In this document: piece after piece, positions 1,824 to 61,352 of the stretch | How positions within the stretch are numbered: the first letter of the stretch is position 1 | How the letters are laid out: each line of letters opens with the position of its first letter | Source: Macrostomum lignano | Lineage: Eukaryota | DNA: 64,000 bases | Direction: 5' to 3' | NCBI GenBank assembly: GCA_002269645.1 | Contig: NIVC01003215.1 | Coordinates: forward strand, 1-64,000 | The notes under the pieces: model-generated | What the model was told of the DNA's origin: nothing | Databases searched by the model: none | The model's input: only the letters and a program-made list of their open reading frames with translations | Made by a program: the position numbers and the translations under genes

Positions 1824-3309
1824 TCAGGGGCGCGTCGGAGAAGACGCCGACTCGCTAGACGGAGCGTCCGGACTGTCGCAGAGCAGCAGCGAGTCCAGCT
1901 GGTTGAGCGCCGACTGGTCGAACAGCAGGTCGCCGAGGCCGGCTAGGAGGTCGCCGCCATCAGCACCGGCGGGCTCGGCAGCGACAGGCCAGTCGACGTC
2001 TGGAACTGCAAAGGCCGGAGCGTCGAGGGTGTCAGCGCAGGCGGTTTCGGCGCCAGCGCCGGCGGCGGTGGCCAGGTGTCGGCCATCCAGGCCTGACACT
2101 TGCGCGGCTGGCCAGAGTGGCCTGCAGTCGCCGCCGGAGCCGGTCGGCCACACGCGAGCTGCCGAGCGGCAGGAGGCGCCGGTGCTGGTTCTGGGACTGA
2201 TTTTGCCGCTGTGCGCAGCCGGTCGAGCCAGCTGCAGCGCGAGCGCCAGCGTCATGAGCAGGCGCGCCAGACCCCGACCCTGCTGCTGAGGGTTGGCCAC
2301 AGGCACTGCTGTCCTGTCTGCCGGGATCGAGCGCGCGCCGCTCAGAGCTGAAACGCCCTGGCCGCAGCCGCCCTCCAGCTGCACAAGCAGGTGGTTCAGC
2401 CTGCTGCCCAGCTTTTCCAGCTTCTCCTTAAGCTCGGAGTTCTCGCAGCGCAAGTAGCGATTCTCAACCTCCAGTCGCTGCAACGCCGACTCCATCTTTT
2501 CCATTTTCTGCTTCTTCCGGTCGCGAGCCTGCTGAGCCGCGATGCGGTTCATTACTTTCCTGGAAAGTTGTCAACGAGAAAAAAATAATTCTTTTCTATG
2601 ATGTTTTGTTTGCAACACACTACTTAAAGTAGACGAGTCAGTAGAATCGCAGGAATGACTTCCGGGTGAGTCTTAATTTACAACAGATTCAAAGCTTACC
2701 GTCGGGTCAGTTTCTCGTCAGCGGTCAGGTGGTTGAGCCGAGCCCGCTTCCGGCCGTAGATTGACGAGCCGAGCAGGTCGTCGTCATCCTCGAACTCGTT
2801 GAAGGACAAAGTCGAGTAGGTCGACGAATCTAGTGGGGCCTTCTGCAGAACCAGATTCTCCGATTCGGTGCGAATCTTTGAGTCTCCGCAGCCACTGACG
2901 AAGACAACGATGTTGAAGTCGTCAGGGCCGGGGACGAAGCCGACGCCGGATTTGTCGAGCCGAGGACGATGCGCGCAGGCTGGGCGTCCTCCATGTCGAG
3001 CAGGCGCGGCTCCTGCATCATCTTGCGCTTGCGAAAGTGCTGCTGCGAGCTGTCGGCTGGGCTAATGATCTTAGTCCCGCTGCCGCCGCCGCCGACAAAA
3101 CAAGTCGACGCAGGAGGCGCGGCCGACTCCGAAACATCGAGGAAGTCGGCCGACGCGTCGGCTCGCTTGAACAGCTGCTGCTGTTGTTGTTGGGTCAGCG
3201 CCAGCTTACCGTTGCCGCCAGGGACTTCAACCAGGCACATCTGCGGCCCGGCGATGCCCGCCTTCTGCAGCAGGGCGTACACGACTTTCGATGACGCGTT
3301 GATAGTCAT
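1824..3309 (-). CDS. xbp1: XBP1-type bZIP transcription factor (2 exons; GT-AG intron 2560-2699; apparent 1-nt frameshift near 2880)
   Basis: The spliced junction reads RKRARLNHLTADEKLTRR|KVMNRIAAQQARDRKKQKMEKMESALQRL, matching the XBP1 basic region (RKRQRLTHLSPEEK..RRKLKNRVAAQTARDRKK). It is followed by a leucine zipper, a dual-hairpin IRE1 site and the hydrophobic stretch LARLLMTLALALQL. Confidence 0.92.
2286..2308 (-). other. Unconventional IRE1-cleaved 23-nt intron of xbp1
   Basis: Sense strand GGACAG|CAGTGCCTGTGGCCAACCCTCAG|CAGCAGGGT. Both sites fit CNG|CNG in 7-nt loops, with stems ACAGG/CCTGT (A-G closing mismatch) and ACCCT/AGGGT. The length is 23 nt, as in nematode and insect xbp1. 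Confidence 0.88.
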
Positions 3310-3517
3310 CTCTGCGTTACAAAGCGAAGCAGGAGGTGTTATGTTCTTCTGATGCAAGAGATTGATGATGAAATATTTAAGACTGGGAGAGTTGTCTAAC
3401 CCATTACAAAGCCATGCGGCGATGCTTATATAGGATGATCAGTACCAAAGGTAATCGGTCAATTCAGTCCAAGATTGTATGACGAAACTACCTCAGAAAA
3501 AACCGCTTGAGAAACTT

Positions 3518-5014: not shown

Positions 5015-8000
5015 TCACTGCAGAGTCGGCCCGCCGTGTCCAGAGGCTGAGGGCCGGCCGGTCCTGCAGTACACTGAGCCCTTGCTGCGCATATACTTGC
5101 TAATATAAGACTTCGCCTTGCCCTGCACATTGGCGTTCACCTCCAGGTCTTCAATATGGCGCGTGTGCTTCAGCTCCTTCAGCAGGATTGCGTGAGTCAT
5201 CTTCTTGACTAAGTACTTCAAGTCCTCTTGATTGGTGATGCGGCCAGTCTGGCAGGTGGCGGCGCAGTAGCGCTGCAGGTGCGCGTGGACGAACTCCTTC
5301 ATCGAGGCGGTGAAGGCAGCCTTCTGCTGCAGCTCGCGCGAGCTGGCCACCTCGCGGCGCCTCTGTTCAACTTTTTCAACGCGCTCCCGGCGCCGGATTT
5401 TCACGGCGTTCCGGGTGATCATGTCCTGGATCTCGTCGTGGGACACCTGGAAGCGCCAGGCTCCGTTGTACTCGAAGGCAGCCTCGGAGGCGGCCGCCGA
5501 TGGCTCCGCAGCGGTCTCTTCGGGCAGGGCGTCCCACGGATAGGTGGGCTCCCAGGAGTGCTCGCTACCCGGCTGGTCGCGCCACACAGTCCGCCTGGTG
5601 CCCAGATGGTAAAAGTACACACGGCCGTCCGGATCGCGGGCCGAGCGCCATTGCGGCGGCAGGCCGCCCGAAGCTGCGACGGCTGCAAAATGAAATGCAA
5701 ATACAATGCGAAAATTATACTACTTACTGCCGTGAGTAGACAGGCACAAAAAACATGAAAACTCGATGATCCGATAAAAAAACTGGCTCACCCGCATCGC
5801 CTCGCTGCGTGACAGCCAGCAGTAGTCGGTGCACATTCGGATCAGCCGCAGCCGCATCGGCGAGATCCTCCTGGCTGACGCAGCCGGCCATAGCGGCGGA
5901 TCTGGCATGGAAGCCGCCGCCGCCGCTGCCGCCTCGCAGTAGCATTGCCTCGAGCACGCGGCACAGGATGGCGTGCACCCCGCCGGACGAGCCGGCGAGG
6001 GCGGCCGCCTGCAGCTGCTTTCTATCGGGCTCCGTCATGCCTGCGTACGCCTCGAACAGCCGGTCGAATTCCTCGGCCGCCGCGCAACTGTCCGCCGTCG
6101 GCTGCGGCGTCGTCGAAGTCAAAGCCAAGGAAGCATCGGGAGCGGCTGCTTGGGTTGATGCTGTTGAAGACGCGGTCGCTGCCGCGCCGGAACCGGGAGC
6201 CGCTGTTTCGTTCGGCAGACGGTCCCAGCGGGCCAGCAGCTCGGCAGCCAGCTGACCGACTGCATCCCGGTCCCCAGACAGACGGCGGAGCAACTGCTGC
6301 AGGCTGTCAGCCACAGAGGCTCGGGCCAACTGATCAGCCGATGCCAGCGGCACGCGGGCCATCGTACGCAGAGCTGCCAAGACCAGCTGAGTGTTCGGCG
6401 AGGATGACGAATTCGAGCAGCAGTTGGGCGCTGCCTCGGTCAGGCAGGCGGCGGTCAGTTGCAGCCCGTGGTGCCGCCGAAGAGTCAGTAGGCAGTCGGC
6501 GACAGCGGGGCCTGCAGCATCGGCCAGCAGCTGTAGCAGTCGGGTCCTGGCTTCGATCGGCAAATCTCGCTGGTGCAGCAGGGCCTTCAACAGCAATTCA
6601 CGATAGCATGGGTTAGCTAGTTAGTTCGGAAATAGGGCTGTCTGTGGACGCTGCCGCAAATCATGGCAAGAGGTCAGTCCGCTAATCCCTGAGCACACAC
6701 CCACACGGATACATACACAGGGTCAACAGCTGTACTGACTTTCTAATCAATTTGGGCTCAGACAACAGCAACACAGTTCATGAGCCAACTCACCCTGAGC
6801 AAGCTTATCACTTCATTAGGCTGCGTCACAGTCTCAAGCGTCAGCAGCTGGCTAGCATCGTGGCCAAAGTCGAGCGTCATTGAAGGCTTGCCGCAGCAGC
6901 TGCAGCGCGTCTCGGCCCCGACTGCGGCTGGCCAAGACAGAAACCGGCAGTCGATGACCAACTCCTCACCTCTGGCGATGTCGCGCCTAGCGAACAGGCC
7001 CAGCCGACGCTGGCCGCCGGTTACCCACACCTGCGCTTCGGTGTTCGCCTCAACTCCGGCGCTGCCGCTGCAGCTGACAAATCTGGCCAGGTTGCCATTC
7101 GCAGTGGCATCAGCCACCAGACTGGCTCCCATCGGCATAAAGTACAGCCGCTTGCCAGCCGCCTTGTCCGCTGCACGACGCTGCCAAAACTCGCTCCAGT
7201 CGACCAGTTCGCCGGCGAATTCAATTAGAAAAGCGCCGGCGCCAACAGACGAGGTGGCGCGGACGCCCCAGTCGCGTCTGGCGCCCAGATACAGAGGCTC
7301 AAGCGGCAGGGCCGATGGCGGCAAGTCGAAGCGCCGATTTGTGCACATCTCGCCGCACGGACAGCGCCTGTTGTCGCATTCGACGCGCAGGGCTCGGTTG
7401 ACGCAATCGGAGCCGCAGGCCTCGGCGCCTCTGGCTGCCTGGTCGGGCGTTGGCACGCTGCAATCGCAGGGCCAGCCGCAAGCCGGCTCAGTCGGGAGAA
7501 ATTTTGCTAGCGGAACGCTTCGTTGCAGCAGCTCGTAGCTCGGCGGCGACATGCCCGGCGGCGCGGCCGGTTCGAGCGGCTCTAGGGCGGCCGCTGCAGC
7601 AGCCCGCTTAGCTGCGGCCTCAGCGGCGGCGGACGAATCCAGGGTGTCGTCGTGCGGCTCCTCCGGCTCGGCGACGTCCGAGGAGAGGCAGCCGGCCAGG
7701 AGGGACTGCCGGTCCTGTTCGTCCAGCTCGACCTCGTTGATGCTACGATCGCTGGCGCCGCCGCCGCCATCGCCGCGCATCGGCGAGGTAGACGAAGCCA
7801 CCGACATGTCGCTGCTGCATCCGCCGCCAGCGGTATCGTCCGGCCTCGGCGCGGGCGGCGGTCGGCCCGGTGGAGTTGTCGGCACAACAGAGACGGCGGC
7901 AGTTGTGGGGCCGGAGTCGGAGGCACGCAGGCGGGACAGCTCCCGCTGCTGCATGGCCACCTGGCTCTGCATCTGCTTGGTGAAGTTAGTCAGCATGCCG

Positions 8001-11000
8001 AAGAAGTCTGTCAGTTGTTTGAAAGCGGCGTTGGCATCGGCGGAGCTGCCGGTTTTACTAGCGGGCTTACCGCCGACAGCTGCGCCGACTGTAGCCGCCA
8101 CCGGCTGCTGCTTCGGCTGGTCAACCCGGACCGGGGCCGCCTTTGACTCCTGGGGTGGGTAACAGTTCGGGATTGCTAGCTGGATGAGCTGGGGCATGGC
8201 TTGTTAGCGATGGATTATTGGGCATCATCATCCCCATGGTCATCATCATGATCAAAGTGGTCCCCATCAGCAGCTGGACATGTTGGCGAGTGAGCAGCTC
8301 CAGCTGCTCTATTTGGTTGCTGCAAAAGTGAAATGCAACGAGGCGGCGGGATGCAATGGTAGAACGTTTTTAATTAATGTTGACTAAACCAAATCCACGG
8401 GAACGCGCATTCACCATACTACTAATACTAAGTAGATTGAAATCCTTAGAGCTCTCATGACTAGAATATCTGGAAAACTTCAAACAACCCAGTTGCTTAA
8501 ATAGAAACCCGCCTATTAAATAGGGAAGCCCCAGAACCCAACTGAAACCTTAATAGAGGCCTGGCAAATTAATAAAACAATGAGAAAAATATAAATTATT
8601 AATAGATCGCTCGGCAGTGTAAAAACAAACTTATTGAAGCTTATTCGACGACGACCAACGGGATGGGGGGGGGGTAGTAGAGAGGAAACTGACGGGGTTG
8701 CTACGAATGCGACAAGCGGTTGTTTTGCATTATTAATAAATATATTCGAGCTAAGCATATGCTATATAGTATTAGCAAGTTTGCCAGGTGCGAGAACGTT
8801 TGGAAGGGGGGCACACAAAATTCAAAGACGAAGGAAAACCGGGGGGCGGCGGTCATGCAAATTCAGCAGTTCAGGCTGCAGGCAGGGCGGAATGCGCGGC
8901 ACGCCGCCGGTCACCCACCTGGCGCGTGGCGTGCAGGCGGTCGCCAGAGGCGCCAGCGTCGCCGTTACCGCTTCTGACTGCGCTACCGTCGTCTCCCGTA
9001 TCGCCTCCGCCGCTGCGCTGCCGCTGGATCATGGCGTCGACTTGGCGCAGCCGCTCCTTCACCTTCTGTCTCTCCAGGTGGCGCCGCTCGCGCTCTTCGG
9101 CTTTGCTGGCCGCGGAGGTCTCGTCGGCGGAGGGTTCAGCGGCCGAAGCTCGCTTGCTCTGGTGGTGCTGTCTGGACCGAGAGCCCGATCGGCTGCGGCG
9201 CTGACGGCTGCGACTGCGCTGCCGCTGATTCTGCTGACGGTGACCGCCGCCTCCGCCTGGCGCAGCTCCGCTAACGCCGCCGCCACCGCCCCCTCCGCCT
9301 GCCGACCCGTCAGAGTCACCGGGGCTTCGCCGGCGTCGATGCCGCTGGGATCGATCTCGACGGCCGCTAGAGCTATCAGCCTCGCCGCTGCTAGCCGACC
9401 GGCTGTCGTCGTCATCGCGCCGGTGACGCCGCTTTGACCGGCTTTTGCCGTGCCGATTCCGACCATTGTCGTCTCTTCGGCGACTGCCGCTATTGCTGTC
9501 GCCGTGTCGACGGTGCCGGTCCTTCTCGTGCTTCCCTTCCTTACCCCGATCGCCGTCTTCTTTGGCGTCTCGGCTGTTGCCTCGCGACCGATGTCGATGG
9601 CGCGACTGAGTCGGCGGCGTTGGGGACCGTCGTCGTCGGCGCTCCTCCCGATGTCGCTCGCCGCTTTGGTCATTGGGCGATCGCTCTCTGACCCGGTCCT
9701 TAGATCGCTCCGATGAGCGCCGGCTCTCCGTTGCCTCCTGGGCGGTTGGGGCCGATCGCGAGGCCAGGCGGTCCTTCGAGAGGCTCCGGCGCAGCTGGGA
9801 CTGCGGCCTTCGATCGTCTTCTCTCTGCGGCGCTTCTACAGGCTCCACCGCCGCAGACTTGGATTCGGCGGCCTTTGTTTCCTTCGACTTTTCATCGCCA
9901 GCTTTATCAGCTTCTTCACAACCGTCGTCATCGTCGTCCTCGCCGAACTCGGCTAGCGTCGACTTAAGCTGCCCTTTAGACGCAGAAGTGTTCCTTCTTT
10001 GAGTTGCGTTGGCGCCGCTTCCGGTGGCTGGCGCACCGGAGTCGCCGCCGGAGAAGCTCATGTGCACTTTCTCGCGAACCTCTGGCAGCTCACGCAGCTC
10101 AGTGCCAGCAGCCACGGCCGCGGCGCCGCGATTGTCAGCGTCGCTAAGCCCCATCTCGGTGTCAGTCAGCTGCTGCGGCTCCTCGTCCGACAGGGTCTCG
10201 TAGGAGCTTCCGCCAGACTCTCTGCGCCCGCCGCCGGGTTTGGCCGCGCCGCCGTCTCCGTTGTTTTTGCTCGCTTCGGCTGTTGAACGCCGACGCTCGC
10301 CGCCGTGATGTCTCTTCGGCGAGGCTCCCGGCGACGAGGCACGATGCGACCGGCGCGGAGACGACGAAGACTTTCGGTGCCTGCTGTGCCGATGGCGCCG
10401 GCTGTCTGGGGAGCGTGAGCCGCGCCTCCGCTTGCGGTGCCTGTGCCGGTGCCCGTGCGAGCCACTGGAGCGGCGACGGCGCCGGCTTCCTCCTCCTTCA
10501 CCTCCTCCGTCGTCCTCGCCGGGATCGCGCTGCACATAGCCGTCGTCGCGCTGGTGCATCATGAGCAGTTCGCGTTCTCGCGAAGATCGCAACCGATCGG
10601 CCTCCTGGCGGGTCATCAGAGCGCCGGGAATGGGCGGCAGCGCGGCCGGATTCAGGTGCGACACGTCTGGCAGTGGCGGCGCCTCGGCTGCCTGCTTGGC
10701 GGCCAGCAGCAGGTTCGGCCGGTTATGCTTCGGCTTGCCCTGGGCTGATGGTTTTAAGCTTGGCAGGCCGAGGTTTGAAAGGGCACTGGAACCGCTGAGG
10801 CTGGAGATGCCGCCAAGACTGGACAGCCCGCCGACACCACCAAGGCCAGAGAGTCCGCTGAGGCCACCGACACCGCTTAGGCTGGCGAGGCCGCCAGAGC
10901 CAAGCGAGGACACGCCTCCAATGCTGCTGCTCATGAGGCTGGTTATGCCGCCAGCTGCGCTGGACTCGGTGACAACGGAACTACCGGATCTGTTTCCACT

Positions 11001-12086
11001 GTCAGCGCGGGTGCGACTACCGCTTGCAGATCCAGTCAGGGCGGCTCCTGAAGATGAGGCCGCCGTGGTGCTGGGCATCGAGGAGCCGCCAGATCCGGAC
11101 TCGAACGGTTGGATTGGCGTCTTCTCGATGTCGGCCGCGTTAGGTAGGAAAAGCTCTGCGCGTCGGTTGCCGATGGGCGCGGCGCCTCCACCGCCGCTGC
11201 CACCGCCGGCCTGTCCGGCATTGCTAGCTGGGCCGCTGTCCGATTCTGGCAGTTTCTTTCGTTTAGCCGGCAAAACGCCAGTCTGCAAGGTTAGCGGCTT
11301 CCGTTTGCCCGGTCCGGCCGGTGCTTGGACCGGCATTGGCTGCTTCCACTGCTGCTGTTGTTGCTGCTGCTGCTGCTGGGTGGGCGAAGTGGCACTCTGC
11401 TGCCCACCAGACTGCTGCTGCATTGAAGCAACCACAATTGACGGCTGCTGAGACGGTTGCTGCTGGGAGTAGGGCACAGCGGAGCCGCTCTTGGCGTAGC
11501 TGATCATGCCGAATGCGCTTTTCAATGCGAATTTCACCGGCCCGCTGCTGGCCGAATGGTGAGAGCCGGCGGACAGGTGCGACAAATCCGGCGGTGGAGG
11601 GGCCGCGGTGTGCTCCAGCGCCGGCAGCTGGTCCGGCAGGGGAATGTCGGCCACATTGCCAAAGTCCTTGTCGCCGTCGAAGTCGTCGTCAATGTCGGAT
11701 CGGCTGGATGACGGCGGCGGCGACTTGCGGAGGTTTCGGGCCGGCGGCCGAGGCGGCGATGACGAAGGCGGCGGCGGTGGAGGCGGCGGCGGCGGCGGAG
11801 GGGGTGGCGGGGGAGGCGGCGGAGGCGGAGGGGGCGGCGGCGGCGCGGCTCTATTGACAGCCTGCACTGGCATCGGAATCTCGTCCAGCTCACTGAAAAG
11901 TTATTTGTTGATTGTTATTAATGTGGAAAATAAATTTCGCAACCATGGCTGCAATCATGGACCACTGAAACACATCTGGACTATTCAGTCTGAGTCTGCT
12001 CCAGTCCAGATAGTAGTTTCAGTGATGCATGGTATCTGATGGGAACAGCAAACTCACTCGGTTGGAAAAGCGGGGTCGTACTCCAT
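5015..12086 (-). CDS. setd2: SETD2/Set2-architecture protein (Pro- and RS-rich N-terminus, AWS, degenerate SET, helical region, WW, SRI); multi-exon
   Basis: Exon 1 (MEYDPAFPTD) splices GT-AG in frame to exon 2 at 11892. AWS: CGSDCVNRALRVEC...CPCGEMCTNRRF. SET region about 6900-7290. WW: WRSARDPDGRVYFYHLGTRRTVW. SRI: FTASMKEFV...GRITNQEDLKYLVKKMTHAILLKEL...KAKSYISKYM. Domain order matches SETD2. Confidence 0.9.
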
Positions 12087-12367
12087 AGCTGTTGAAGCTA
12101 TTCAAGCTTTGACGTCAGATTAGATAATATTTGGCCAGACAGTGTCCGGGTCACAGCATAGCAACTCCGGTCGGTCTGCATGAATAAGAAATTTGGATTT
12201 TAGAAATTGTCCGCTTCAAAGAGCACTTATTATATAATGACTGAAATACTAGCTTTTATGTCAGCATGATAGGATATACACAATTTATAGTTTAAAAGAC
12301 TCCAGCGAGACAGGTCTGCTGAGCTTAGGCGAGATAGCACTACTGCGTTCACGTTACAACTGATAAG

Positions 12368-14292
12368 ACTAATGGACACAGGTGAGGTGGGAATAATGGA
12401 CACAGGTGAGGTGGGACTAATGGACACAGGTGAGATGGAACTAACGGACTCAGGTGAGATGGAACTAATGGGCACAGGTAAGATGGGCCCAATGGGCACA
12501 GATAAGATGGAACTAATGAGCAAAGGTGAGATGAGACTAATGGGCTCAGATGAGATGAGACTACTGGGCTACTGGGCTCAGATGAGATGGGACTACTGGG
12601 CTCAAATGAGATGGGACTACTGGGCTCAGATGAGATGGGACTACTGGGCTCAAATGAGATGAACAACAGGGCTCAGATGAGATGGGACTACTGGGCTCAG
12701 ATGAGATAGGACTACTGGGCTCAGATGAGATGGGACTACTGGGCTCAGATGAGATGGGACTACTGGGCTCAGATGAGATGGGACTACTGGGCTCAGATGA
12801 GATGAGATTTCTGGGGACAGATGAGATGGGACTAATGGGCTCAGATGAGATGGGACTACTGGGCTCAGATGAGATGAGATTTCTGGGGACAGATGAGATG
12901 GGACTAATGGGCTCAGATCAGCTAGGACCTACAAAAGCAAAACGACAAGAGACTTGAAACTGGACTGGACTACTGGGCTCAGATGAGGTGGGACTACTGG
13001 GCTCAGATGAGATGAGATTTCTGGGGTCAGATGAGATGGGACTAATGGGCAAAGGTGAGATGGGACTACTGGGCTCAGATGAGATGGGACTACTGGGCTC
13101 AGATGAGATGGGACTACTTGGCTCAGATGAGATGGGACTACTGGGCTCAAATGAGATGAACAACAGGGCTCAGATGAGATGGGACTACTGGGCTCAGGTG
13201 AGATGGGACTACTGGGCTCAGGTGATATGGGACTACTGGGCTCAGATGAGATGAGATTTCTGGGGTCAGATGAGATGGGACTAATGGGCAAAGGTGAGAT
13301 GGGACTACTGGGCTCAGATGAGATGGGACTACTGGGCTCAGATGAGATGGGACTACTTGGCTCAGATGAGATGGGACTACTCGGCTCAAATGAGATGAAC
13401 AACAGGGCTCAGATGAGATGGGACTACTGGGCTCAGGTGAGATGGGACTACTGGGCTCAGGTGATATGGGACTACTGGGCTCAGATGAGATGAGATTTCT
13501 GGGGTCAGATGAGATGGGACTAATGGGCAAAGGTGAGATGAGACTAATGGGCTCAGATGAGATGGGACTACTGGGCTCAAATGAGATGGGACTACTTGGC
13601 TCAGATGAGATGGGACTACTGGGCTCAAATGAGATGAACAACAGGGCTTAGATAAGATGGGACTACTGGGCTCAGATGAGATGGGATTACAGGGCTCAGA
13701 TGAGATGGGACTACTGGGCTCAGATGAGATGAACAACAGGGCTCAGATGAGATGGGACTACTGGGCTCAAATGAAATGAATAACAGGGCTCAGATGAGAT
13801 GGGACTACAGGGCTCAGATGAGATGGGACTACAGGGCTCAGATGAGATGGGACTACAGGGCTCAGATGAGATGGGACTACTGGGCTCAGATGAGATAGGA
13901 ACACTGGGCTCAGATGAGATGAGATTTCTGGGGTCAGATGAGATGGGACTAATGGGCTCATGTGAGATGGGACTACTAAGCTCAGATGAGATGGGACTAA
14001 TGGGTTCAGATGAGATGGGACTACAGGGCTCAGATGAGATGGGACTACAGGGCTCAGATGAGATGGGACTACTGGGCTCAGATGAGATAGGAACACTGGG
14101 CTCAGATGAGATGAGATTTCTGGGGTCAGATGAGATGGGACTAATGGGCTCAGGTGAGATGGGACTACTAAGCTCAGATGAGATGGGACTAATGGGTTCA
14201 GATGAGATGGGACTAATGGGCTCAGGTGAGATGGCACTGCTGGGCACAGATGAGCTAGGACCTACAAAAGCAAAACGACAAGAGACTTGAAA
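12368..14292. repeat. 24-bp minisatellite (GATGAGATGGGACTACTGGGCTCA), about 80 units, with a 239-bp higher-order repeat
   Basis: Direct inspection. The repeat ORFs show an 8-aa period (GLLGSDEM), and ORF ends recur at 13163, 13402 and 13641. Confidence 0.95.
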
Positions 14293-14560: not shown

Positions 14561-17500
14561 TCAGGCCGATTCGCCAAACACAACGCAGTCGCTGCGTAGG
14601 CGCTTCCTCCGCCTGGCGAACAGCTGGCCCGGGCCCTGCAGCGCCTCGGCCAGCAGCGGCTGCGCAGGCGGCTCCGCTAAAATCGGCTGAGCCGGCGGCT
14701 GCGACTGGGGCTGCTTCGACGGCTGCTGCTGCGTCTCAACCGTCTCATTGGATGCCGTCGGCGGCGTTGGTGGCGGCGACGGCAGCGGCTCGTCCGGCAG
14801 TAGCAGCGGCCGGAGCAGCGGCTCACAAAGGCCGAGGCCCTCCAGAGAGGCGGACAGCGGCTCCTCGGCGGCGGGGGCCAGTGCTGTGGCCGACGCCGGG
14901 TCCAGGGTAGTCCGGCGCCGCTTCTTGTGCTTTTTCTTGGCGGACAACGGCGCAGTGGCAGCGGCGGAGTCGGCAGCCTCGCAGCCGTCTGACAGGCTGG
15001 CTATGGCGCTAATGAAGTCGTCAAGGCTGTAGCGCCGGCACAGCAGGGCAAAGCGGGACCGAAGCTGCTGCGGCAGGGCGGGCCAAGGCTGCAGCGAGGA
15101 CAGCAGCACGAGGTGGAAGTGCATGCCAGAGAGGCAGGCTCCGTCCTTGCCGGCTCCGTCTAGCAGCTCTCGGTGCCGGTGGACGGCAATGCGCACGACG
15201 GCCCGGACGCAGGCGTGGAACAGGCTGGCCTCGTCCGCGCCTAGCGTGCCGGCCCGCTTGTTGTATCTGGGGAGAGAGGAGCGTGGATTGGGAGCTGGGT
15301 GAGTGTTTTCGAATTTTAGAACTAGTGCTTTTACAATTATGACTAGTACTGTTGGAATTGGGACTCGTGCTGCTGGAATCGGGACTCATGCTGCTGGAAT
15401 CGGGACTAGTGCTATTGGAATGGGGACTAGTGCTGCTGGAATCGGGACTAGTGCTATTGGAATGGGGACTAGTGCTGTTGGAATGGGGACTATTGCTGCT
15501 GGAATCGGGACTAGTGCTGATGGAATTGGGACTAGTGCTGTTGGAATGGGGACTAGTCCTGCTGGAATCGGGACTAGTGCCGCTGGAATGGGGACTAGTG
15601 CTGCTGGAATCGGGACTAGTGCCGCTGGAATGGGGACTAGTGCTGCTGGAATCGGGACTAGTGCTGCTGGAATGGGGACTAGTGCTGCTGGAATGGAAAC
15701 TAGTGCTGTTGGAATGGGGACTAGTGCTGCTGGAATCGGGACTAGTGCTGCTGGAATGGGGACTAGTGCTGCTGGAATCGGGACTCTGTAATCAGCACTC
15801 ACTTGGAAGCCATCAGCCTGGCGCGGTCAACCAGCAACAGCAGTACGGTGTACAGCAGATGCTGGTGCACAAATGCGCACCTGGCGCACAGGTCGCCAAG
15901 CAAAGAGAGGCAGCGCAATCGAAAATTGGCGCCAAGATGCGAATCAATAGCGCGCTTCCACAGGTAGTCCAGGAAGCCGTGAGCAATCCGATCATTTGCT
16001 GAGCAGGCCAGCGCCAGCAGCAGGTGCAGTCGGGATGGTCCAGCCAGATGGGCCAACTCCCTGTCGAACACGGTCAGCAAGTCCTTGTACACAGCCTTGG
16101 TGCGGGGCCAGTCGCTGGGGTCCAGCTCGGCTCGCACGTAGCACAGCAGCGGATGAAGGCAGCCGTTGAGCTTCAGCCGCTGGTCGCAGGCGCGGCAACT
16201 GGCACCGCCAGCGGCAGGAGACGCGAGCAGCAACAGGCTGTGCAGCTCCGGGGTCAGCTTCCACCAGGTGTCAGTAGTTGCTGACGACTGACGACTGGCG
16301 AGACAGGCGGCTGACGCTTCGGCTGCGGCGGCCGATTGAGCGCAGGTGCACCGAGCCACCAAAGCGGTGCCTGAAAGTGCCCAGATTTGTACCAATAAAT
16401 CCTGAAGGACTGAAAAACTGACTACTAGCAAGTCAGTAGCAAGATAAGAGTTTGAAGTGAAGCATATTGCTTATATAGAGAGTGCAAAATAGGGTTTCAA
16501 CCAAACCTTTAAAAGTATATTTTGTTAGCATCTTACCATCGAAGCTTCGGCTTACGCCAGCCGTCTCATCAGCCAGGCTCTCCAGTTTAGCCACCGTTCG
16601 ACAGGCGACAAACAGCAGACGGGTGCGCAAGCCACCGCCGCTGCCGCCAGCTCCCAGATAGGTGGCAGCGGCACGGAGCACATTGAGCAGGTAGCAGGCC
16701 AGCTGGCGGGTCGGCCGGCCCCACAGGCAGTGCGACTCGGCCAAGTCGCAGATTGCGCCAGGCGCGGAGGCTGGGAAAGCGGAAGCGAGAGCCTCTAGCA
16801 GCCGGTGGGCGAGGCTGAACTGGCGTCTGAATGTGCGGGAATTTGGGGGAAATTACACAGGCTAGAATAGAGGCACATTGAAGGACCCAAAAGGAAGGGA
16901 TAGAGGCACACTGAAGGAAATAGAAGGGAAAGGATAGGGGCACATTGAAGGACATAGAAGGAAATAGTATATTAGAAGGATAAGGTTAAGAATAAGGTAT
17001 ATTAAAGATAAGGTGCAGCCCTTCGGCGTCGATACGATGGCCTAGGTGTGTGACTTCGTCCTTGAAAAAAGTGCACTTCTCAAGCTTGCAGGTCAGCCCG
17101 GACTCCTTGAAGACCTTCAGAACTGCTCTCAGGTTGCGGAGGTGACTGGCGTCGGTTTCGCCTGTGATGATGACATCATCGATGAAGGATGCAGAGTGCG
17201 GAATTCCTCGCAGTAAGCTGTCCATCACCCGCTGAAACACGCTGGGGGCGATCGACACGCCGAAAGGCAGACGGGTGTCCCAGCGAGGTGTTGATGGTAC
17301 AGAGCTCTTGAGCATCCTCATCCAGGGGAAGCTGCGAAAATGCCTGGCTCAGATCCAGTTTTGAGAACTTCTTTCTGCCAGCCAAGCGTGAAAACAGCTC
17401 GTCGATGTTCGGCAGCGGGTAAGCCTCAGGCCGGATAGCTGTGTTGACCGACTGCTTGAAATCAGCGCAGATGCGCACGCTGCCGTCGGACTTCATTACC

Positions 17501-19955
17501 GGCACGATCGGGGACGCCCAGTCGGAATTTTTGACCGGCACCAGGATTCCTTGGTCGATTTCCTTCTGCAGCTGCTGCTCAACCTTCTCGCGCAGCGCAA
17601 ACGGCACCGGCCGCGCCTTATAGAACCTCGGTCTGGCGTTCTCCTTCAGACTGATGGACACCGGCTTGCCGCTGAACTCGCCCAGACCTTGAAAGACTTC
17701 TGAGAACTCCTGTAGCAACTCCTTGGCTGCATCAGCTTCTTCCATCCGCTTGATAGATTGCCAGTCCAGCCGCAGGCGGTGTAGCCAGTCTCGACCAAGG
17801 AGGCTCGGACCACAACCGGCGACAACCAGCAGCGGCAGCTGTTCCTCGGCCGAACCTTGCGAAACTCGCACGCGTACGAAGAGCTGACCGAGGACACGGA
17901 CGGTTTGACCGGTGTACGCATTGAGCTGAACCGTTGACGCAGACAGAGACATCCGGCTTCCCATGTTTTCTTTGAGCGTACGCTCGGACATCAGCGATAC
18001 GGATGCCCCCGTGTCCACCACCATCTCGAATCGCTTCTCCTCGATGAAGACAGAGGTCACGATTAGAGGAAACCTGGCCTGCGATCGGTCAGCCCCCAGA
18101 TGGTAGAAGGGATAAGCGACCTCGACTGGGCTGGGCGGCTCGGCGGCCTGAGCTGAGCTGCTGTCTGAAGGCTGCTGGTCAACCAGCTGGTGCATTTGCT
18201 GCTGCTGTGTCACCGCCTTGCATGCCTTCGCGGTGTGCCCGGTTTTGCTGCAGTTGAAACAGCGTTTGTCCGCGAAGGGACATTTGGCTCCGGATGGCGA
18301 GTCGACAAGCAGCGGAAACAGCGCCGCCGGCCTTCTGTTCCAGACTGACGGCTGTCTTGCGGTCGCTGTCGTTCCATTCGAAGCACGGAGTCGCTCTCTG
18401 TCGGTGACGATGCCGATGTCGCTGCCGCAGGTTTTGCTGAGCCCAGCGATTGACAGTTTTTGGCTGCTGACTCGCCCGCTTGCGCGATCTGTTTGGCAGT
18501 TTCGAGGGTCAACTCGGTCTCCATCAGGAGAAGGCGCTGGATCTGCTGATCCGCGATGCCGCACACCAGCCTGTCGCGCAGCATGTCAGACAGGCTGCCG
18601 CCGTAATTGCAGAACTCCGCCAGCTTGCGCAGCTCCGCAAGGAACTCTGCCACCGACTCTCCAGGGCGCTGAACTCGGTTATTGAAGTGGAACCTCTGAA
18701 TGATCTCACTCGGCCTTGGGTTGAAATGAGCGCTCAGCAGCTCGCGTATTTCGGCATAGGATTTGTCCGCGATTTTGGCTGGAGAGCAGAGGCTTCTGGC
18801 CAACTGAAAGGTTTTCCTACCGCAGACGCTCAGCAGCGTGGCCCTCTTTTTACTTTCGTCGGTGATGTCCTGTGCCAGGAAATGTTGCTCCAGACGCTCC
18901 TGGTACTCATCCCAGGTTTCCTCGGAGTCCTCATATTCTCCGATTGCGCGGTTAGGCATTGCTTAGCCACAATTCTCGTCGCCACTAAAAACAACTCTAT
19001 AGTGGTTAGTGCGAGAAACCATAAGTATTGAGCTCTGAGCTCACTAGACGACTTTTATATTTTGGTACAAGCGAACGTAAGAATGATTGATGCATAAAAG
19101 CACAAGGGGTTTTAAAAGAACGCGCACACTAGTCACGCTCAATGAAGCATTGTCAGTCAATCGATGAAAATAAAACAGCGAATGTACTCAATGTACACCG
19201 CTGAGTCACGCGATACGACAGGCACATTGAAGCACATAGAAGGAAATAGTATATTAGAAGGATAGGGGCACATTGAAGGATACAGAAAGGACAGGATGGA
19301 GGCACAAAAGAAAAGGATAGAGGCACATGAAGGACCCCATGGGAGGGATAGTAACACATTGAAGGACCCAAAAAGAAAGGTTAGTGGCACAGTGAAGGGC
19401 CCAGTGTGAGCGATAGAGGCGCACTGAAGGACCCAGTGTGAGCGATAGAGGCGCACTGAAAGACCCAGTGAGGATAGTCGCAGCCCAGAAGCAAGACGCT
19501 AAGAAGCCGAAGCACACCAAGCGACACAATTAAATCCGAACCTGTCAGTCTTGAAGTCCTCAGCCTGGGCAGTTCCATCTGGCAGAGCGGGAGAGAACCA
19601 GACCACGGCAGATTGCATGGCCAGTTGGCGCAGGTCGGGATGCCGGCTAGCCAGGTGCAGGCAGAGCCGGCGGTACCTGTCCAGTCCGGCCGAGTCCAGC
19701 AGACGACAGGGCGGCCAGTTGGTGAGCAGCAGGCGGGCCAGCTCAGCGTGCCGCTCGGGGTCAATGCGGCCAGCCAGGGCTAACAGGTAGCGAACGACTG
19801 CGCCAGCCTGAGCCTCGGTTGCTAGGCGCTGGGCGGTCAGGCCACCTGAGGCCAACTCGTGGCAGGCCAAGTTGTAGTGCTTTGCGCTGGCTGGATTGGA
19901 GTCGAGGGCGCGTGACAGGGCGCCACAAAGTGCGCCGGCTGCCTGAATGGCGCCT
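14561..19955 (-). CDS. rrn3: RRN3/TIF-IA-like RNA polymerase I initiation factor (at least 4 exons: about 19955-19542, 16826-16550, 16375-15811, 15268-14561; first exon not located)
   Basis: Colinear matches to RRN3 blocks: AHRLLEALASAFP...RQLACYLLNVL (cf. CHRALQIIARYVP...RTLECYVHNLL); KAVYKDLLTVFDREL...GFLDYLWKR (cf. KDLYRDLINIFDKLL...AFLEHLWKK); LFHACVRAVVRIAVHRHRELL (cf. PFYSACQAVFYTFVFRHKQLL). The 19542-to-16826 splice is in frame. Confidence 0.8.
15345..15786. repeat. 21-bp intronic minisatellite (GGGACTAGTGCTGCTGGAATC/G), about 21 copies
   Basis: Direct inspection; it fills most of an rrn3 intron. Confidence 0.95.
17011..19220 (-). mobile_element. 3'-truncated Ty3/Gypsy LTR retrotransposon (putative 5' LTR, gag, protease, partial RT) in an rrn3 intron
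   Basis: A putative LTR starts TGTCGTATCG at 19220 and contains TATAAAA. A PBS-like TGGCGACGAG precedes the gag ATG at 18959. Gag has two CCHC-type knuckles. Protease VVDTGAS; RT motifs VRICAD, LDLSQAF, RLPFG, FIDDVII. There is no RNase H, integrase or 3' LTR. Frameshifts occur near 18287 and 17278. Confidence 0.9.
19221..19480. repeat. Degenerate GAGGCACATTGAAGG-type minisatellite, continued at 16860-16982 on the other side of the Gypsy insertion
   Basis: The same motif family flanks both ends of the retroelement. Confidence 0.7.
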
Positions 19956-21474: not shown

Positions 21475-22794
21475 CGAGGGCTGCTTAATAAGTTTGCGGA
21501 AAACCAAACTTATCTTCAAGCGAATCAAACGAAATTTTATGAACTTTTTCCTTCAGATATTGGCACCTTTCACACAAATTTTCAGCCAGTTTGGCCAAAA
21601 TGTTGCGACGCAGTGGCCGAAGAAGTGATGAAACCCCCACTCCAGTGCTGCGCCTGACTGAGCGCGACAGGCGAGTCGCAATTCTGGTCCAATTCCGGCT
21701 TGGCCTGTCTGCCTCCGAATGCTTGCAGACGCTTCAAAAGGCCCTTGAGAGTGAAGCCCCATCCCAGACGATGGTGTACAAGTGGTTCGGTCGATTCCGC
21801 TCTGGTTGTCTGGAGCTGGACGATGATGAACGTGAAGGCCGTCCAAATTCGTCCATCTCGGACACGACTGTGGCCAGTGTCTGAAAGCTGCTCGATGCAG
21901 ACCGCCGAGTGACAATTCGGGAAATCGAAAAACATGTCGGGATTTCGGATTCAAGCGTCATTACTATCTTGCACGATCACCTCGGCATGAGGAAGGTGTC
22001 AGCTCGCTGGGTCCCTCATCAACTGAAGCCGGCTCAGATGCAGGCCCGCGTGGATTTTGCGAATTTCATGCTCGACAAGTTCGACGCAGGCGCCTCAAAT
22101 TTGGTGGACGGCATCCTCACAGGTGATGAAACGTGGGTGTACTTTTATGATCCCGAGACAAAAGTACAGAGCAAGCAGTGGGTCGCCTTTGAGGAGGATT
22201 CGCCCTTGAAATTTCGTCACGAGCGAAGCGTCGGCAAAGTGATGGCTGCGGTGTTTTTCCATTGGTGCGGAATTCTGCTGCCCGTTCTGCTCGAGGAGGG
22301 AGCCACAGTGACTGGCAGCTGGTACTCCAGTGTCTGCCTGCCGCAGGTGCTGGAATTCCTGCGTCGAGAGCGGCCAAAGACCAGAGATCGCGGCATTTTC
22401 CTGCACCACGACAATGCGCCCGCTCACAGAGCCAGTGTCACCCAGCAGTTCTTGGCATCAACTGAGCTGACTCTGCTGCCGCATCCGGCCTACTCGCCCG
22501 ACCTCGCGCCTGCAGACTTCTTTCTCTTTCCAAAGATCAAGAAAAATCTGAAGGGGAAGCGCTTCGACACTCGTGAGGAGCTGGAACAGGCGTTGAATGC
22601 GGAGCTGGAAGCCGTCACAAAGGCGGAATTGAGGGACTGCTTTGCGGCGTGGTTTCATTGGATGAAGAAATGCGTTTATCTGGCTGGGGACTATGTTGAG
22701 AAGTGCCATTAGGTTGGGCTAAGTGTGTGTAAAATTTCACGACTGTGCGATAACTATAAGTATGTTTTTCCGCGAACTTATTAAGCAGCCCTCG
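21475..22794 (+). mobile_element. Full-length mariner (DD34D) transposon, 1320 bp, TA TSD, one in-frame stop in the transposase
   Basis: TIRs CGAGGGCTGCTTAATAAGTT(T/C)GCGGAAAA are flanked by TA. ORFs 21591-21884 and 21909-22712 share a frame. Motifs: HTH, WVPHQL, TGDETW, HHDNAPAH, YSPDLAPAD. There are 34 residues between the last two Asp. Confidence 0.96.
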
Positions 22795-60844: not shown

Positions 60845-61352
60845 ACAGATAAGCCAGGCACCCAACTGTACATTGGGGCAGATAAGCCAGGCACTCAACT
60901 GTATATTGGGGCAGATAAGCCAGGCACTCAACTGTATATTGGGGCAGATAAGCCAGGCACTCAACTGTATATTGGGGCAGATAAGCCAGGCACTCAACTG
61001 TATATTGGGGCAGATAAGCCAGGCACCCAACTGTATATTGGGGCAGATAAGCCAGGCACCCAACTGTATATTGGGGCAGATAAGCCAGGCACCCAACTGT
61101 ATATTGGGGCAGATAAGCCAGGCACTCAACTGTATATTGGGGCAGATAAGCCAGGCACTCAACTGTATATTGGGGCAGATAAGCCAGGCAGTCAACTGTA
61201 TATTGGGGCAGATAAGCCAGGCACCCAACTGTATATTGGGGCAGATAAGCCAGGCACCCAACTGTATATTGGGGCAGATAAGCCAGGCACCCAACTGTAT
61301 ATTGGGGCAGATAAGCCAGGCACCCAACTGTGTATTGGGGCAGATAAGCCAG
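60845..61352. repeat. 33-bp minisatellite (GGGGCAGATAAGCCAGGCACYCAACTGTATATT), about 15 copies, immediately 5' of the CCR4 coding exon
   Basis: Direct inspection; 11-aa periodic ORFs. Confidence 0.95.

What the first reader, a model, noticed from the sequence alone, without database searches (positions are those of the whole stretch)
6880..7300. SETD2-architecture protein with a predicted catalytically dead SET domain
Seen in frame: RFxNHSC becomes RFVSCSG plus a 4-aa insertion, losing the SAM-binding Asn/His and a Zn-ligand Cys. ELTFDY becomes ELVIDC, losing the invariant Tyr. EYCGE becomes EFAGE. The post-SET CxCxxxxC becomes CSCCGKPS. AWS cysteines, WW and the Pol II CTD-binding SRI remain well conserved. 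Knowledge: these residues are required for SET methyl transfer. Inference: a pseudo-methyltransferase kept as a Pol II-tethered scaffold, reader or competitor of active H3K36 methyltransferase. Coordinated in-frame substitutions are unlikely to be sequencing errors.
Basis: partly seen in the sequence, partly recalled or inferred. Interest (0 to 1): 0.78.

Follow-up and report, generated by a model that had tools for sequence, protein, structure and literature searches.

The report
Flatworm SETD2 with degenerate catalytic site
The flatworm Macrostomum lignano carries a SETD2-type gene (the enzyme that normally marks transcribed genes with H3K36me3) that keeps its RNA-polymerase-docking and partner-binding domains but has lost the residues needed for methyl transfer, so it is probably a natural enzyme-dead SETD2.

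Summary
The window is the first 64 kb of Macrostomum lignano contig NIVC01003215.1. The gene on the minus strand (5015-8197; GenBank PAA52569.1, Mlig017137g2) has AWS, SET, WW and SRI domains, and its best solved-structure match is human SETD2. Among the 157 nearest relatives drawn from 1.84 billion representatives, only the two M. lignano sequences have lost the motif III Asn (N1628 to S) and the motif IV Tyr (Y1666 to C). H1629, the zinc ligand C1631, the first Gly of motif I and the third post-SET Cys are also replaced, and there are two 4-residue insertions. Of columns at least 95% conserved, 9 of 28 are changed in the SET core and 0 of 22 in AWS, WW and SRI. Parasitic flatworm orthologues are canonical and share flatworm-specific motifs with this protein, so it is a SETD2 orthologue with lineage-specific loss. 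The reading frame is intact, the gene model comes from an RNA-seq-based annotation, and the SET core still models as a SETD2 fold. A catalytically inactive protein kept for non-catalytic, Pol II-linked roles is the best reading. Activity was not measured, and an intact paralogue could not be excluded.

The parts
5015..8197 (-). SETD2-like gene as annotated from RNA-seq (GenBank PAA52569.1, BOX15_Mlig017137g2, 954 aa). CDS exons are 8197-6794, 6584-5792 and 5682-5015 (stop included), with GT-AG introns 6793-6585 and 5791-5683.
   Evidence: My spliced model is 100% identical to P0001 over all 743 residues queried. Junctions and phases were checked. Pfam families on the product are AWS, SET, WW and SRI.
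7328..7480 (-). AWS zinc-cluster domain, fully intact.
   Evidence: Pfam AWS E = 6e-11. All 12 columns that are at least 95% conserved are retained, including every Cys. It carries the flatworm-specific W.CDC..PT and NRA motifs.
6941..7303 (-). SET core. The fold appears retained but the catalytic motifs are degenerate.
   Evidence: Pfam SET E = 2e-11. Median identity to 76 full-architecture SETD2s is 37%, against 61% among those 76, the lowest of all 77. 9 of 28 highly conserved columns are changed. AF2 pLDDT is about 86-94, and the model superposes on SETD2 crystal structures at about 2.0 A over about 175 columns.
7262..7279 (-). SET motif I (G-x-G, contacts AdoMet): KGWG has become RDWG, with the first Gly replaced by Asp (codon 7273-7271).
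   Evidence: The role of the motif is described in PMC3585878.
7208..7222 (-). SET motif II (Y-x-G): EFAGE, with Tyr1579 replaced by Phe (7219-7217). This is a conservative change and is not unique to this lineage.
   Evidence: Y1579 is part of the lysine cage (PMC4973290, PMC8110526).
7040..7087 (-). SET motif III (RF-x-NH-x-C-x-PN): ARFVSCS+GSAG+VEANT. N1628 is Ser (7075-7073), H1629 is Cys (7072-7070), there is a 4-residue insertion GSAG (7066-7055), the zinc ligand C1631 is Val (7054-7052) and P1633 is Ala. R1625 is kept.
6941..6970 (-). SET motif IV (ELxFDY): GEELVIDCRF. Y1666 is Cys (6949-6947). F1664 is Ile, which is flatworm-wide.
6863..6937 (-). Autoinhibitory loop and post-SET. R1670 is Ser, there is a 4-residue insertion PAAV (6931-6920), and C-x-C-x4-C has become C-S-C-C-G-K-P-S-M, with the third Cys replaced by Met (6880-6878) and one extra Cys.
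   Evidence: AF2 gives pLDDT about 40 for this segment. The C4 zinc finger is formed by C1631 plus three post-SET Cys (PMC11626819).
5570..5662 (-). WW domain; both Trp residues are present.
   Evidence: Matches the SETD2 WW domain (2mdi) at E = 1e-8. Pfam WW is recorded on the product. Conservation equals the family median, and 0 of 6 conserved columns are changed.
5069..5320 (-). SRI (Set2-Rpb1 interacting) domain.
   Evidence: Pfam SRI E = 4e-15. Matches the human SETD2 SRI (2a7o) at E = 5e-20. 0 of 4 conserved columns are changed. Of the CTD-contact residues, K2506 and H2514 are identical, F2505 is Leu and R2510 is Lys (conservative), and V2483 is His (alignment read against PMC11626819).
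8919..11873 (-). Possible N-terminal exon (985 codons; Pro-, Gln- and Arg/Ser-rich, disordered). It would join in frame through the GT donor at 8918 and the AG acceptor at 8150, giving a 1923-aa protein. This is uncertain: GenBank annotates it as a separate upstream gene.
   Evidence: One search shows the phases fit. P0151 begins exactly at the 8149 acceptor. GenBank splits the two, and its pipeline cuts transcripts at trans-splice sites. The ORF shows no similarity to other SETD2 N-termini.

Best explanation
This is the Macrostomum lignano orthologue of SETD2/Set2 (KMT3A). Its methyltransferase centre has been disabled in this lineage, while the rest of the protein has been kept. What the sequence shows: three of the four SET motifs have lost residues that are otherwise near-invariant. 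These are the first Gly of motif I, the Asn and His of motif III, and the Tyr of motif IV. Two of the four ligands of the post-SET zinc site (C1631 and the third post-SET Cys) are also gone, and there are two in-frame 4-residue insertions next to the active site. AWS, WW and SRI are as well conserved as in ordinary animals, or better than in other flatworms. What I infer: the protein cannot bind AdoMet productively or position the lysine, so it does not methylate H3K36. It still folds. It is still recruited to elongating RNA polymerase II through the SRI domain binding the phosphorylated CTD, and it can still contact nucleosomes through AWS and the remaining H3-groove residues, and proline-rich partners through WW. 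It would therefore act as a non-catalytic adaptor on transcribing chromatin. H3K36 methylation in this animal would come from another enzyme (NSD- or ASH1-type, or an undetected SETD2 paralogue), or trimethylation would be reduced.
For: Identity and architecture. Pfam finds AWS, SET and SRI and WW on the product. Human SETD2 is the best PDB match for the catalytic module (7e-34, against ASH1L at 6e-28 and NSD1-3 at about 1e-19 to 1e-22) and for WW and SRI. The top hits in the exhaustive search are SETD2 orthologues.

Orthology. The protein shares flatworm-specific motifs with Schistosoma, Taenia and Mesocestoides SETD2, and an AWS-only tree places it among the flatworm sequences.

Lineage-specific catalytic loss. 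Only the M. lignano sequences lack N(NH) and Y(FDY) among 157 relatives. 9 of 28 SET columns that are at least 95% conserved are changed, against 0 of 22 in the other domains (p = 0.003). Its SET core is the most divergent of 77 full-architecture SETD2s, while its WW sits at the family median. Measured against slowly evolving references, M. lignano scores AWS .53, SET .37, WW .58, SRI .51; Schistosoma scores .44.54.46.35.

Mutational precedent. In Set1, N1016A, H1017L/R, Y1054A and Y967A are null, and motifs I, III and IV contact AdoMet (PMC3585878). In Set2, R195G and C201A are catalytically dead (PMC3629013) and H199L leaves only residual H3K36me1. Y1579, M1607, F1664 and Y1666 form the lysine cage, and C1631 is a zinc ligand.

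Not decaying. The 954 codons are uninterrupted with clean GT-AG introns. The gene model comes from an RNA-seq-only annotation. The SET core models confidently as a SETD2 fold.

Precedent for a non-catalytic role. Full-length catalytically dead Set2 still confers MMS resistance, a role for which that paper reports phospho-CTD binding is needed.
Against: No enzymatic, AdoMet-binding or CTD-binding measurement exists for this protein. SET-fold enzymes with atypical motifs are known (from my own knowledge, PR/SET and SMYD types), and Set1 H1017A behaves like wild type, so the His-to-Cys change alone is not decisive. The number of cysteines around the lost zinc site is unchanged, with a new Cys at the H1629 position and an extra Cys in post-SET, so a rewired site cannot be excluded. 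Purifying selection is inferred from domain conservation and an open frame, not from dN/dS. Expression is inferred from the annotation method, and reads cannot be assigned among copies that are at least 95% identical. AF2 used an alignment of canonical homologues, which biases the model towards the canonical fold. SRI contact V2483 is changed to His.
Confidence: 0.62

Rival explanations
1. The protein is still an active methyltransferase with a remodelled active site. It may have a different substrate, a different product state, or a rewired post-SET zinc site that uses the new cysteines.
For: The SET fold, R1625, M1607, F1606, F1589, E1636, F1668 and the PN Asn are retained. There are still four cysteines near the former zinc site. 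Set1 H1017A is wild-type-like. Three algal NSD-like proteins have Ser in place of the His.
Against: The Asn of NH and the Tyr of FDY are each changed to small residues. The corresponding Set1 Ala mutants are null, and no other protein among 157 relatives tolerates either change. On top of that there is a Gly-to-Asp change in motif I, and the insertion sits directly in the motif III-IV pseudoknot. AF2 gives no confident post-SET structure.
Confidence: 0.13
2. It is a redundant copy drifting towards pseudogenisation in a recently duplicated (hidden polyploid) genome, and an intact SETD2 elsewhere does the work.
For: The M. lignano DV1 assembly has extensive duplication, with 180 Mb in blocks at least 95% identical. 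The 'g2' suffix implies more copies. An intact paralogue could not be excluded, because only about 31 of the 150 hits had their source looked up and short fragments could be hidden inside other clusters.
Against: The SET core has diverged to 37% identity, which needs far more time than the recent duplication. Over that time the 954-codon frame, the splice sites, AWS, WW and SRI stayed intact, with 0 of 22 conserved columns changed. The second M. lignano sequence has identical SET motifs, so the degeneration predates the copies. Every hit with the flatworm signature whose source could be traced comes from another species; one, P0089, could not be traced.
Confidence: 0.1
3. It is an assembly or annotation artefact, such as PacBio indel errors or a chimeric gene model.
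For: The assembly is long-read based. UniProt A0A1I8HAG4 is clearly a mis-fused model that reads through into Xbp1.
Against: The changes are in-frame substitutions plus two insertions of exactly 12 nt each. Two different database entries agree residue for residue over the SET domain. Flanking domains in the same exon are normal.
Confidence: 0.02

Closest known systems
SETD2 / Set2 (KMT3A), the Pol II-coupled H3K36 trimethyltransferase; nearest sequenced relatives are parasitic flatworm SETD2s (Schistosoma rodhaini CAH8675669.1, Taenia asiatica VDK39472.1, Mesocestoides corti VDD75809.1)
   Same: The domain order is the same: AWS, SET, post-SET region, a conserved segment after post-SET, WW, SRI. 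SETD2 is the best match for every domain. Flatworm-specific sequence signatures are shared. The SRI basic CTD-contact residues and both WW tryptophans are kept.
   Different: Motif I Gly, motif III Asn/His/Cys and motif IV Tyr are replaced. The third post-SET Cys is lost. There are two 4-residue insertions at the active site. The autoinhibitory R1670 is replaced by Ser. The SET core is the most divergent of 77 orthologues compared.
Laboratory catalytic-dead Set2 alleles (yeast set2-R195G, -H199L, -C201A)
   Same: The same motif III positions are altered (His and Cys), and the SRI-mediated Pol II binding region is intact. The dead yeast alleles keep methylation-independent functions (MMS resistance; partial rescue of mTORC1-stress sensitivity).
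   Different: Those are engineered single substitutions. Here many positions changed together in nature and have apparently been kept over evolutionary time. R195 (human R1625) is retained here.
Naturally inactive SET-domain proteins, for example C. elegans SET-24 (PMC12886896). From my own knowledge and not tested here: SETD5/KMT2E, yeast Set3/Set4, Drosophila UpSET
   Same: A recognisable SET fold lacking catalytic competence, used as a chromatin-associated non-enzymatic module.
   Different: Those belong to other SET subfamilies and have no AWS, WW or SRI. None is a SETD2 orthologue tethered to Pol II.
NSD and ASH1L H3K36 methyltransferases
   Same: They have an AWS-SET-post-SET catalytic module with the same lysine-cage residues.
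   Different: They have no WW or SRI, and they score lower. An NSD-type gene is separately expressed in M. lignano neoblasts and is the likeliest provider of H3K36 methylation if this protein is inactive.

Membership tests
SETD2/Set2 (KMT3A) orthologue group | An AWS-SET(-post-SET) module that is most similar to SETD2 rather than to NSD or ASH1L | tested here: met
   Pfam AWS and SET. In the PDB search, SETD2 scores 7e-34, ASH1L 6e-28 and NSD1-3 about 1e-19 to 1e-22. The named top hits of the exhaustive HMMER search are SETD2s.
SETD2/Set2 (KMT3A) orthologue group | C-terminal WW followed by an SRI (Set2-Rpb1 interacting) domain | tested here: met
   Pfam SRI 4e-15. Pfam WW on the product. SETD2 WW 1e-8 and SETD2 SRI 5e-20.
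SETD2/Set2 (KMT3A) orthologue group | Orthology (descent from the flatworm SETD2 gene) rather than ancient paralogy | tested here: met
   The protein shares the derived motifs W.CDC..PT, NRA, ARFV and I-D-(Y) with Schistosoma and cestode SETD2. An AWS-only NJ tree nests it in the flatworm group (no bootstrap, so suggestive only). Its highest SET identities are to cestode-type sequences.
SETD2/Set2 (KMT3A) orthologue group | Canonical catalytic residues: motif I GxG, motif II YxG, motif III NHxC, motif IV FDY Tyr, and post-SET CxCx4C | tested here: not met
   G to D, Y to F, N to S, H to C, C to V, Y to C, and third post-SET Cys to Met.
SETD2/Set2 (KMT3A) orthologue group | H3K36 (tri)methyltransferase activity | not testable with these tools
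   This needs an in vitro methyltransferase assay or an H3K36me3 blot or ChIP after knock-down.
SETD2/Set2 (KMT3A) orthologue group | Binding to the Ser2/Ser5-phosphorylated Pol II CTD through SRI | tested here: inconclusive
   Only sequence could be examined. Of the five contact residues (V2483, F2505, K2506, R2510, H2514; PMC11626819), two are identical, two are conservative (F to L, R to K) and one is changed (V to H), from the alignment.
Pseudoenzymes: catalytically inactive SET-domain proteins | Homologous fold retained | tested here: met
   AF2 pLDDT is about 86-94 over AWS plus the SET core. Foldseek's best matches are SETD2 structures at about 2.0 A over about 175 columns. Caveat: the input alignment consisted of canonical homologues.
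Pseudoenzymes: catalytically inactive SET-domain proteins | Loss of residues required for cofactor binding or catalysis | tested here: met
   together with mutational data in PMC3585878, PMC3629013 and bioRxiv 10.64898/2025.12.09.693285.
Pseudoenzymes: catalytically inactive SET-domain proteins | Maintained by selection and expressed (not a pseudogene) | tested here: inconclusive
   In favour: an intact 954-codon frame and splice sites; 0 of 22 conserved columns changed outside SET; an RNA-seq-derived gene model. Missing: dN/dS, because no close relatives were retrievable, and expression data specific to this locus.
Pseudoenzymes: catalytically inactive SET-domain proteins | Demonstrated absence of activity | not testable with these tools
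   This needs biochemistry.

The most novel reading that the evidence does not exclude
This degenerate gene (with its near-identical copies) is the only SETD2 in Macrostomum lignano. A free-living animal would then have given up SETD2 catalysis altogether while keeping the Pol II-bound SETD2 scaffold under selection. That would imply that the conserved, selected function in this lineage is non-enzymatic, and that co-transcriptional H3K36me3 is either absent or written by an NSD- or ASH1-type enzyme.
Probability: 0.38. Interest if true: 0.8.

Novelty: new variant of a known kind. Interest (0 to 1): 0.62.

Why it matters
SETD2/Set2 is treated as the universal co-transcriptional H3K36 trimethylase, and how much of its biology is non-catalytic is an open question (review PMC9167812; yeast dead-allele data in PMC3629013). 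A natural SETD2 orthologue that keeps AWS, WW and SRI but has lost its catalytic residues would be an evolutionary separation-of-function allele. It would show which parts of the protein selection retains when catalysis is gone. It occurs in a flatworm where RNAi is routine (my own knowledge) and transgenesis is established (PMC5730564), so the question can be tested directly. It also raises the question of who writes H3K36me3 in this animal. On a practical level, the UniProt auto-names 'Histone-lysine N-methyltransferase' and 'SET domain-containing protein' probably overstate the function of this protein.

Tried and rejected
1. Word-indexed homologue search. The SET segment and the WW-SRI segment returned nothing. 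A flatworm profile returned only proteins of 405 aa or less. The index evidently does not surface long eukaryotic proteins, so I draw no conclusion from these absences.

2. Intact M. lignano SETD2 paralogue. I looked up the source of about 31 of the 150 best representatives, chosen by composition, by divergence and by flatworm-signature motifs. None is from M. lignano. This is not exhaustive.

3. Locus-specific expression or orthologue tables. I searched the supplements of six M. lignano papers for Mlig017137 or SETD2; a seventh paper had no supplements held. The only results were an NSD-like neoblast-enriched gene and an unlinked 'SETD2' symbol in gene-ontology lists.

4. Joining the upstream 985-codon ORF as exon 1. 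The frame and splice phases fit, but the ORF has no similarity to other SETD2 N-termini and the RNA-based annotation separates the two. I kept it only as a possibility.

5. The middle exon against the PDB gave only weak armadillo-repeat-like noise.

6. Rejected as diagnostic: EYCGE to EFAGE, and Phe to Ile in FDY.

7. Pseudogene and artefact readings were considered and given low weight; see the rival explanations.
Full report
WHAT IS THERE

The region lies in a eukaryotic, minus-strand gene. Long GC-rich open segments (GC3 about 0.73) are separated by AT-richer introns with GT-AG ends. I assembled a spliced model. The exhaustive HMMER scan of 1.84 billion representatives returned a protein 100% identical over all 743 residues queried (P0001). 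That protein is PAA52569.1, 'hypothetical protein BOX15_Mlig017137g2' of Macrostomum lignano (UniRef A0A267DVF4, auto-named 'Histone-lysine N-methyltransferase'). It is encoded on contig NIVC01003215.1 of GCA_002269645.1, and the locus coordinates show that the window is the first 64 kb of that contig.

The RNA-supported CDS is 8197-6794, 6584-5792 and 5682-5015, giving 954 aa. A second M. lignano entry (P0151, UniRef A0A1I8HAG4) starts exactly at my acceptor at 8149 and has identical SET motifs. It reads through into the downstream Xbp1 gene, so it is a mis-fused model.

CHECK OF THE OBSERVATION

Pfam finds AWS and SET in the large exon and SRI in the last exon. WW is recorded on the product. 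Human SETD2 is the best solved-structure match for the catalytic module (7e-34; ASH1L 6e-28; NSD1-3 about 1e-19 to 1e-22), for WW (1e-8) and for SRI (5e-20).

- RFMNHS----CEPNC against RFVSCSGSAGVEANT. N1628 is Ser, H1629 is Cys, there is a GSAG insertion, C1631 is Val and P1633 is Ala.
- ELTFDY against ELVIDC. Y1666 is Cys.
- EYCGE against EFAGE.
- Post-SET C-x-C-x4-C against C-S-C-C-G-K-P-S-M. The third Cys is Met and there is one extra Cys.

- KGWG to RDWG, replacing the first Gly of motif I.
- K1639 to Val.
- The autoinhibitory R1670 to Ser.
- A second 4-residue insertion (PAAV) after motif IV.

IS IT MORE THAN CHANCE, AND IS IT SPECIFIC?

I aligned the 157 best relatives to the query. The motif III Asn is Asn in 155 of 157 and the motif IV Tyr is Tyr in 155 of 157. 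The only exceptions are the two M. lignano sequences. The His is Cys only in M. lignano; three algal NSD-like proteins have Ser.

Taking every column that is at least 95% conserved among the other proteins, M. lignano has changed 0 of 12 in AWS, 9 of 28 in SET, 0 of 6 in WW and 0 of 4 in SRI. For the SET columns the other 150 proteins have a median of 0 and a maximum of 5. SET against the other three domains gives Fisher p = 0.003.

Across 76 other full-architecture SETD2s, the SET core is normally the best-conserved part, with a median pairwise identity of 0.61. M. lignano averages 0.37 to them, the lowest of all 77. Its WW equals the family median (0.50 against 0.50), and AWS (0.49 against 0.60) and SRI (0.44 against 0.55) are only mildly lower.

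Measured against four slowly evolving deuterostome references, M. lignano scores AWS .53, SET .37, WW .58, SRI .51, and Schistosoma scores .44.54.46.35. M. lignano is therefore not a generally fast-evolving lineage. Only its catalytic core is.

ORTHOLOGY

Three of the hits are parasitic flatworm SETD2s: Schistosoma rodhaini, Taenia asiatica and Mesocestoides corti. Several more carry the same signature. All have canonical NHSC, I-D-Y and CxCx4C.

M. lignano shares their derived features: W.CDC..PT and NRA in AWS, ARFV in motif III, and Ile instead of Phe before D-Y. An AWS-only NJ tree nests it among them. When SET is included it has by far the longest branch (no support values, so this is suggestive only).

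Two consequences follow. First, this is the flatworm SETD2 orthologue with loss specific to its lineage, not an ancient divergent paralogue. Second, F1664 to Ile, and Ala in E-Y-A-G-E (seen in cestodes), are not signs of inactivation, and Y1579 to Phe occurs in about 4% of relatives.

WHAT THE SUBSTITUTIONS MEAN

This section rests on established knowledge plus inference.

Motifs I (GxG), III (RFINHxCxPN) and IV (ELxFDY) contact AdoMet, and motifs III and IV form the active-site pseudoknot (PMC3585878). In yeast Set1, N1016A, H1017L/R, Y1054A (motif IV Tyr) and Y967A (motif II Tyr) are null, but H1017A behaves like wild type. In yeast Set2, R195G and C201A are catalytically dead (PMC3629013), and H199L leaves only residual H3K36me1 (bioRxiv 10.64898/2025.12.09.693285). 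By my own reading of the Set2 sequence, these are the R, H and C of RF-x-N-H-x-C.

In human SETD2, Y1579, M1607, F1664 and Y1666 cage the target lysine (PMC4973290, PMC8110526). Y1666 is a cancer hotspot. C1631 plus three post-SET cysteines form the zinc finger that folds over substrate and cofactor (PMC11626819).

M. lignano combines several hits at these positions: Asn to Ser, Tyr to Cys, Gly to Asp, and loss of two of the four zinc ligands, with an insertion inside the pseudoknot. I consider canonical methyl transfer very unlikely, about 0.75-0.8 that the protein is inactive. The His-to-Cys change alone would not be decisive.

One caveat: the count of cysteines near the former zinc site is preserved, with a new Cys at the H1629 position and an extra Cys in post-SET, so a rewired site is conceivable.

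IS IT A LIVE GENE?

The 954-codon frame and both introns are intact, and at this GC content an open frame of this length is not expected by chance. The SET core is still recognisable at E = 1e-34 and models confidently (pLDDT about 86-94). It superposes on SETD2 crystal structures at about 2.0 A over about 175 columns, while post-SET is predicted disordered with pLDDT about 40. The model is biased by the canonical alignment used as input.

Mlig_3_7 gene models are derived only from RNA-seq and de novo transcripts. Names sharing a prefix are clusters at 95% identity or more (PMC5730564). So 'Mlig017137.g2' implies transcript support and at least one more near-identical copy.

The depth of SET divergence, together with identical motifs in the second sequence, shows that the degeneration long predates the recent genome duplication. 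Formal dN/dS could not be computed because no close relative was retrievable.

LIKELY MECHANISM

This section is inference. The SRI keeps the basic CTD-contact residues: K2506 and H2514 are identical, R2510 is Lys, F2505 is Leu, and V2483 is changed to His (one search read). Both WW tryptophans and all AWS cysteines are present. Several H3-groove residues remain (F1589, F1606, M1607, E1636, F1668; read using numbering anchors).

The protein would therefore still ride on elongating Pol II and touch nucleosomes, but without writing H3K36me3, acting as an adaptor. There is direct precedent. Full-length dead Set2 confers MMS resistance, a role for which that paper reports phospho-CTD binding is needed (PMC3629013). 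Methylation-independent Set2 functions are also suggested by the H199L data.

An NSD/WHSC1-like gene is expressed and neoblast-enriched in M. lignano and is a candidate source of H3K36 methylation.

WHAT REMAINS OPEN

1. Whether an intact SETD2 paralogue exists. None was found among the roughly 31 of 150 hits whose source was looked up. Every flatworm-signature hit that could be traced comes from another species, and one (P0089) was untraceable. The check is not exhaustive, and I estimate about a 0.2-0.25 chance that one exists.

2. The true N-terminus. A 985-codon Pro-, Gln- and Arg/Ser-rich ORF (11873-8919) can be joined in frame. However, GenBank separates it, the annotation pipeline cuts at trans-splice sites, and the ORF has no similarity to other SETD2 N-termini.

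3. Activity, binding and phenotype.

COMPARISON AND NOVELTY

By architecture and descent this is a SETD2/Set2 family member, but it fails the family's catalytic-residue criterion. As an enzyme it should not be filed as an H3K36 methyltransferase. It most resembles the engineered dead Set2 alleles and, as a class, the naturally inactive SET-domain proteins (for example C. elegans SET-24, PMC12886896).

I found no description of a naturally inactivated SETD2 orthologue, and no M. lignano paper mentioning this gene surfaced among the listed results. I rate it a new variant of a known kind, with interest 0.62. It would rise to about 0.8 if this is the animal's only SETD2.

Noticed in passing
window 1824-2552 (-), intron element 2262-2336 (-): The downstream neighbour is an Xbp1-type bZIP gene (Pfam bZIP_1 and bZIP_2). 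It carries the unconventional IRE1-spliced Hac1/Xbp1 intron, matched by Rfam RF04247 at 41.2 bits against a gathering score of 41.
   Followed up: partly
window 5015-8149 plus 1824-3357 (-): UniProt A0A1I8HAG4 (P0151, 1394 aa) fuses the SETD2-like gene with the downstream Xbp1 gene, skips 10 residues (VPLAKFLPTE), and differs at a few residues near the SRI and the C-terminus. It is a read-through gene-model artefact, possibly from a slightly different copy.
   Followed up: yes
window 7070-7072 and 6893-6904 (-): The two lost zinc-ligand cysteines (C1631 and the third post-SET Cys) are matched in number by two new cysteines: one at the H1629 position and an extra one in C-S-C-C. This could be a rewired zinc site or a coincidence.
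   Followed up: no
window 8871-11873 (-): A 1000-codon ORF encodes a low-complexity protein with a poly-Pro start, poly-Gln, Gly/Ser repeats and long Arg/Ser/His-rich tracts. It lies directly upstream on the same strand and has an in-phase GT donor 48 nt before its stop codon. GenBank annotates it as a separate 652-aa gene. It may be a separate cistron of a trans-spliced transcriptional unit or an alternative N-terminal exon.
   Followed up: partly
window 12367-14261; 35562-37650; 38308-39920; 56388-57002; 60846-61352; 62577-63546: There are large minisatellite arrays with units of 24/48, 73/220, 21, 21, 33 and 42 nt and up to about 79 copies. They generate long spurious ORFs, such as the 'MGLLGSDE' repeats and the weak Cornifin and LRR Pfam hits.
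   Followed up: no
window 17176-18564 (-) and 21909-22712 (+): Transposon remnants. One is an LTR-retrotransposon gag/protease/RT ORF, lying within the span that GenBank annotates as an RRN3 gene (L001 1-3637, equal to window 14561-18197). The other is a mariner/Tc1-type DDE transposase ORF.
   Followed up: no
tool behaviour: The word-indexed protein search returned nothing for two SETD2 segments, although an indexed relative visibly shares a 9-mer with one of them. With a profile it returned only proteins of 405 aa or less. Absences from that tool should not be read as absence of homologues for long eukaryotic proteins.
   Followed up: partly
P0135, P0149, P0119 (hits): A group of green-algal and environmental NSD-like SET proteins has N-S-x-C instead of N-H-x-C in motif III. 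The His is therefore not strictly invariant in the wider AWS-SET family.
   Followed up: no
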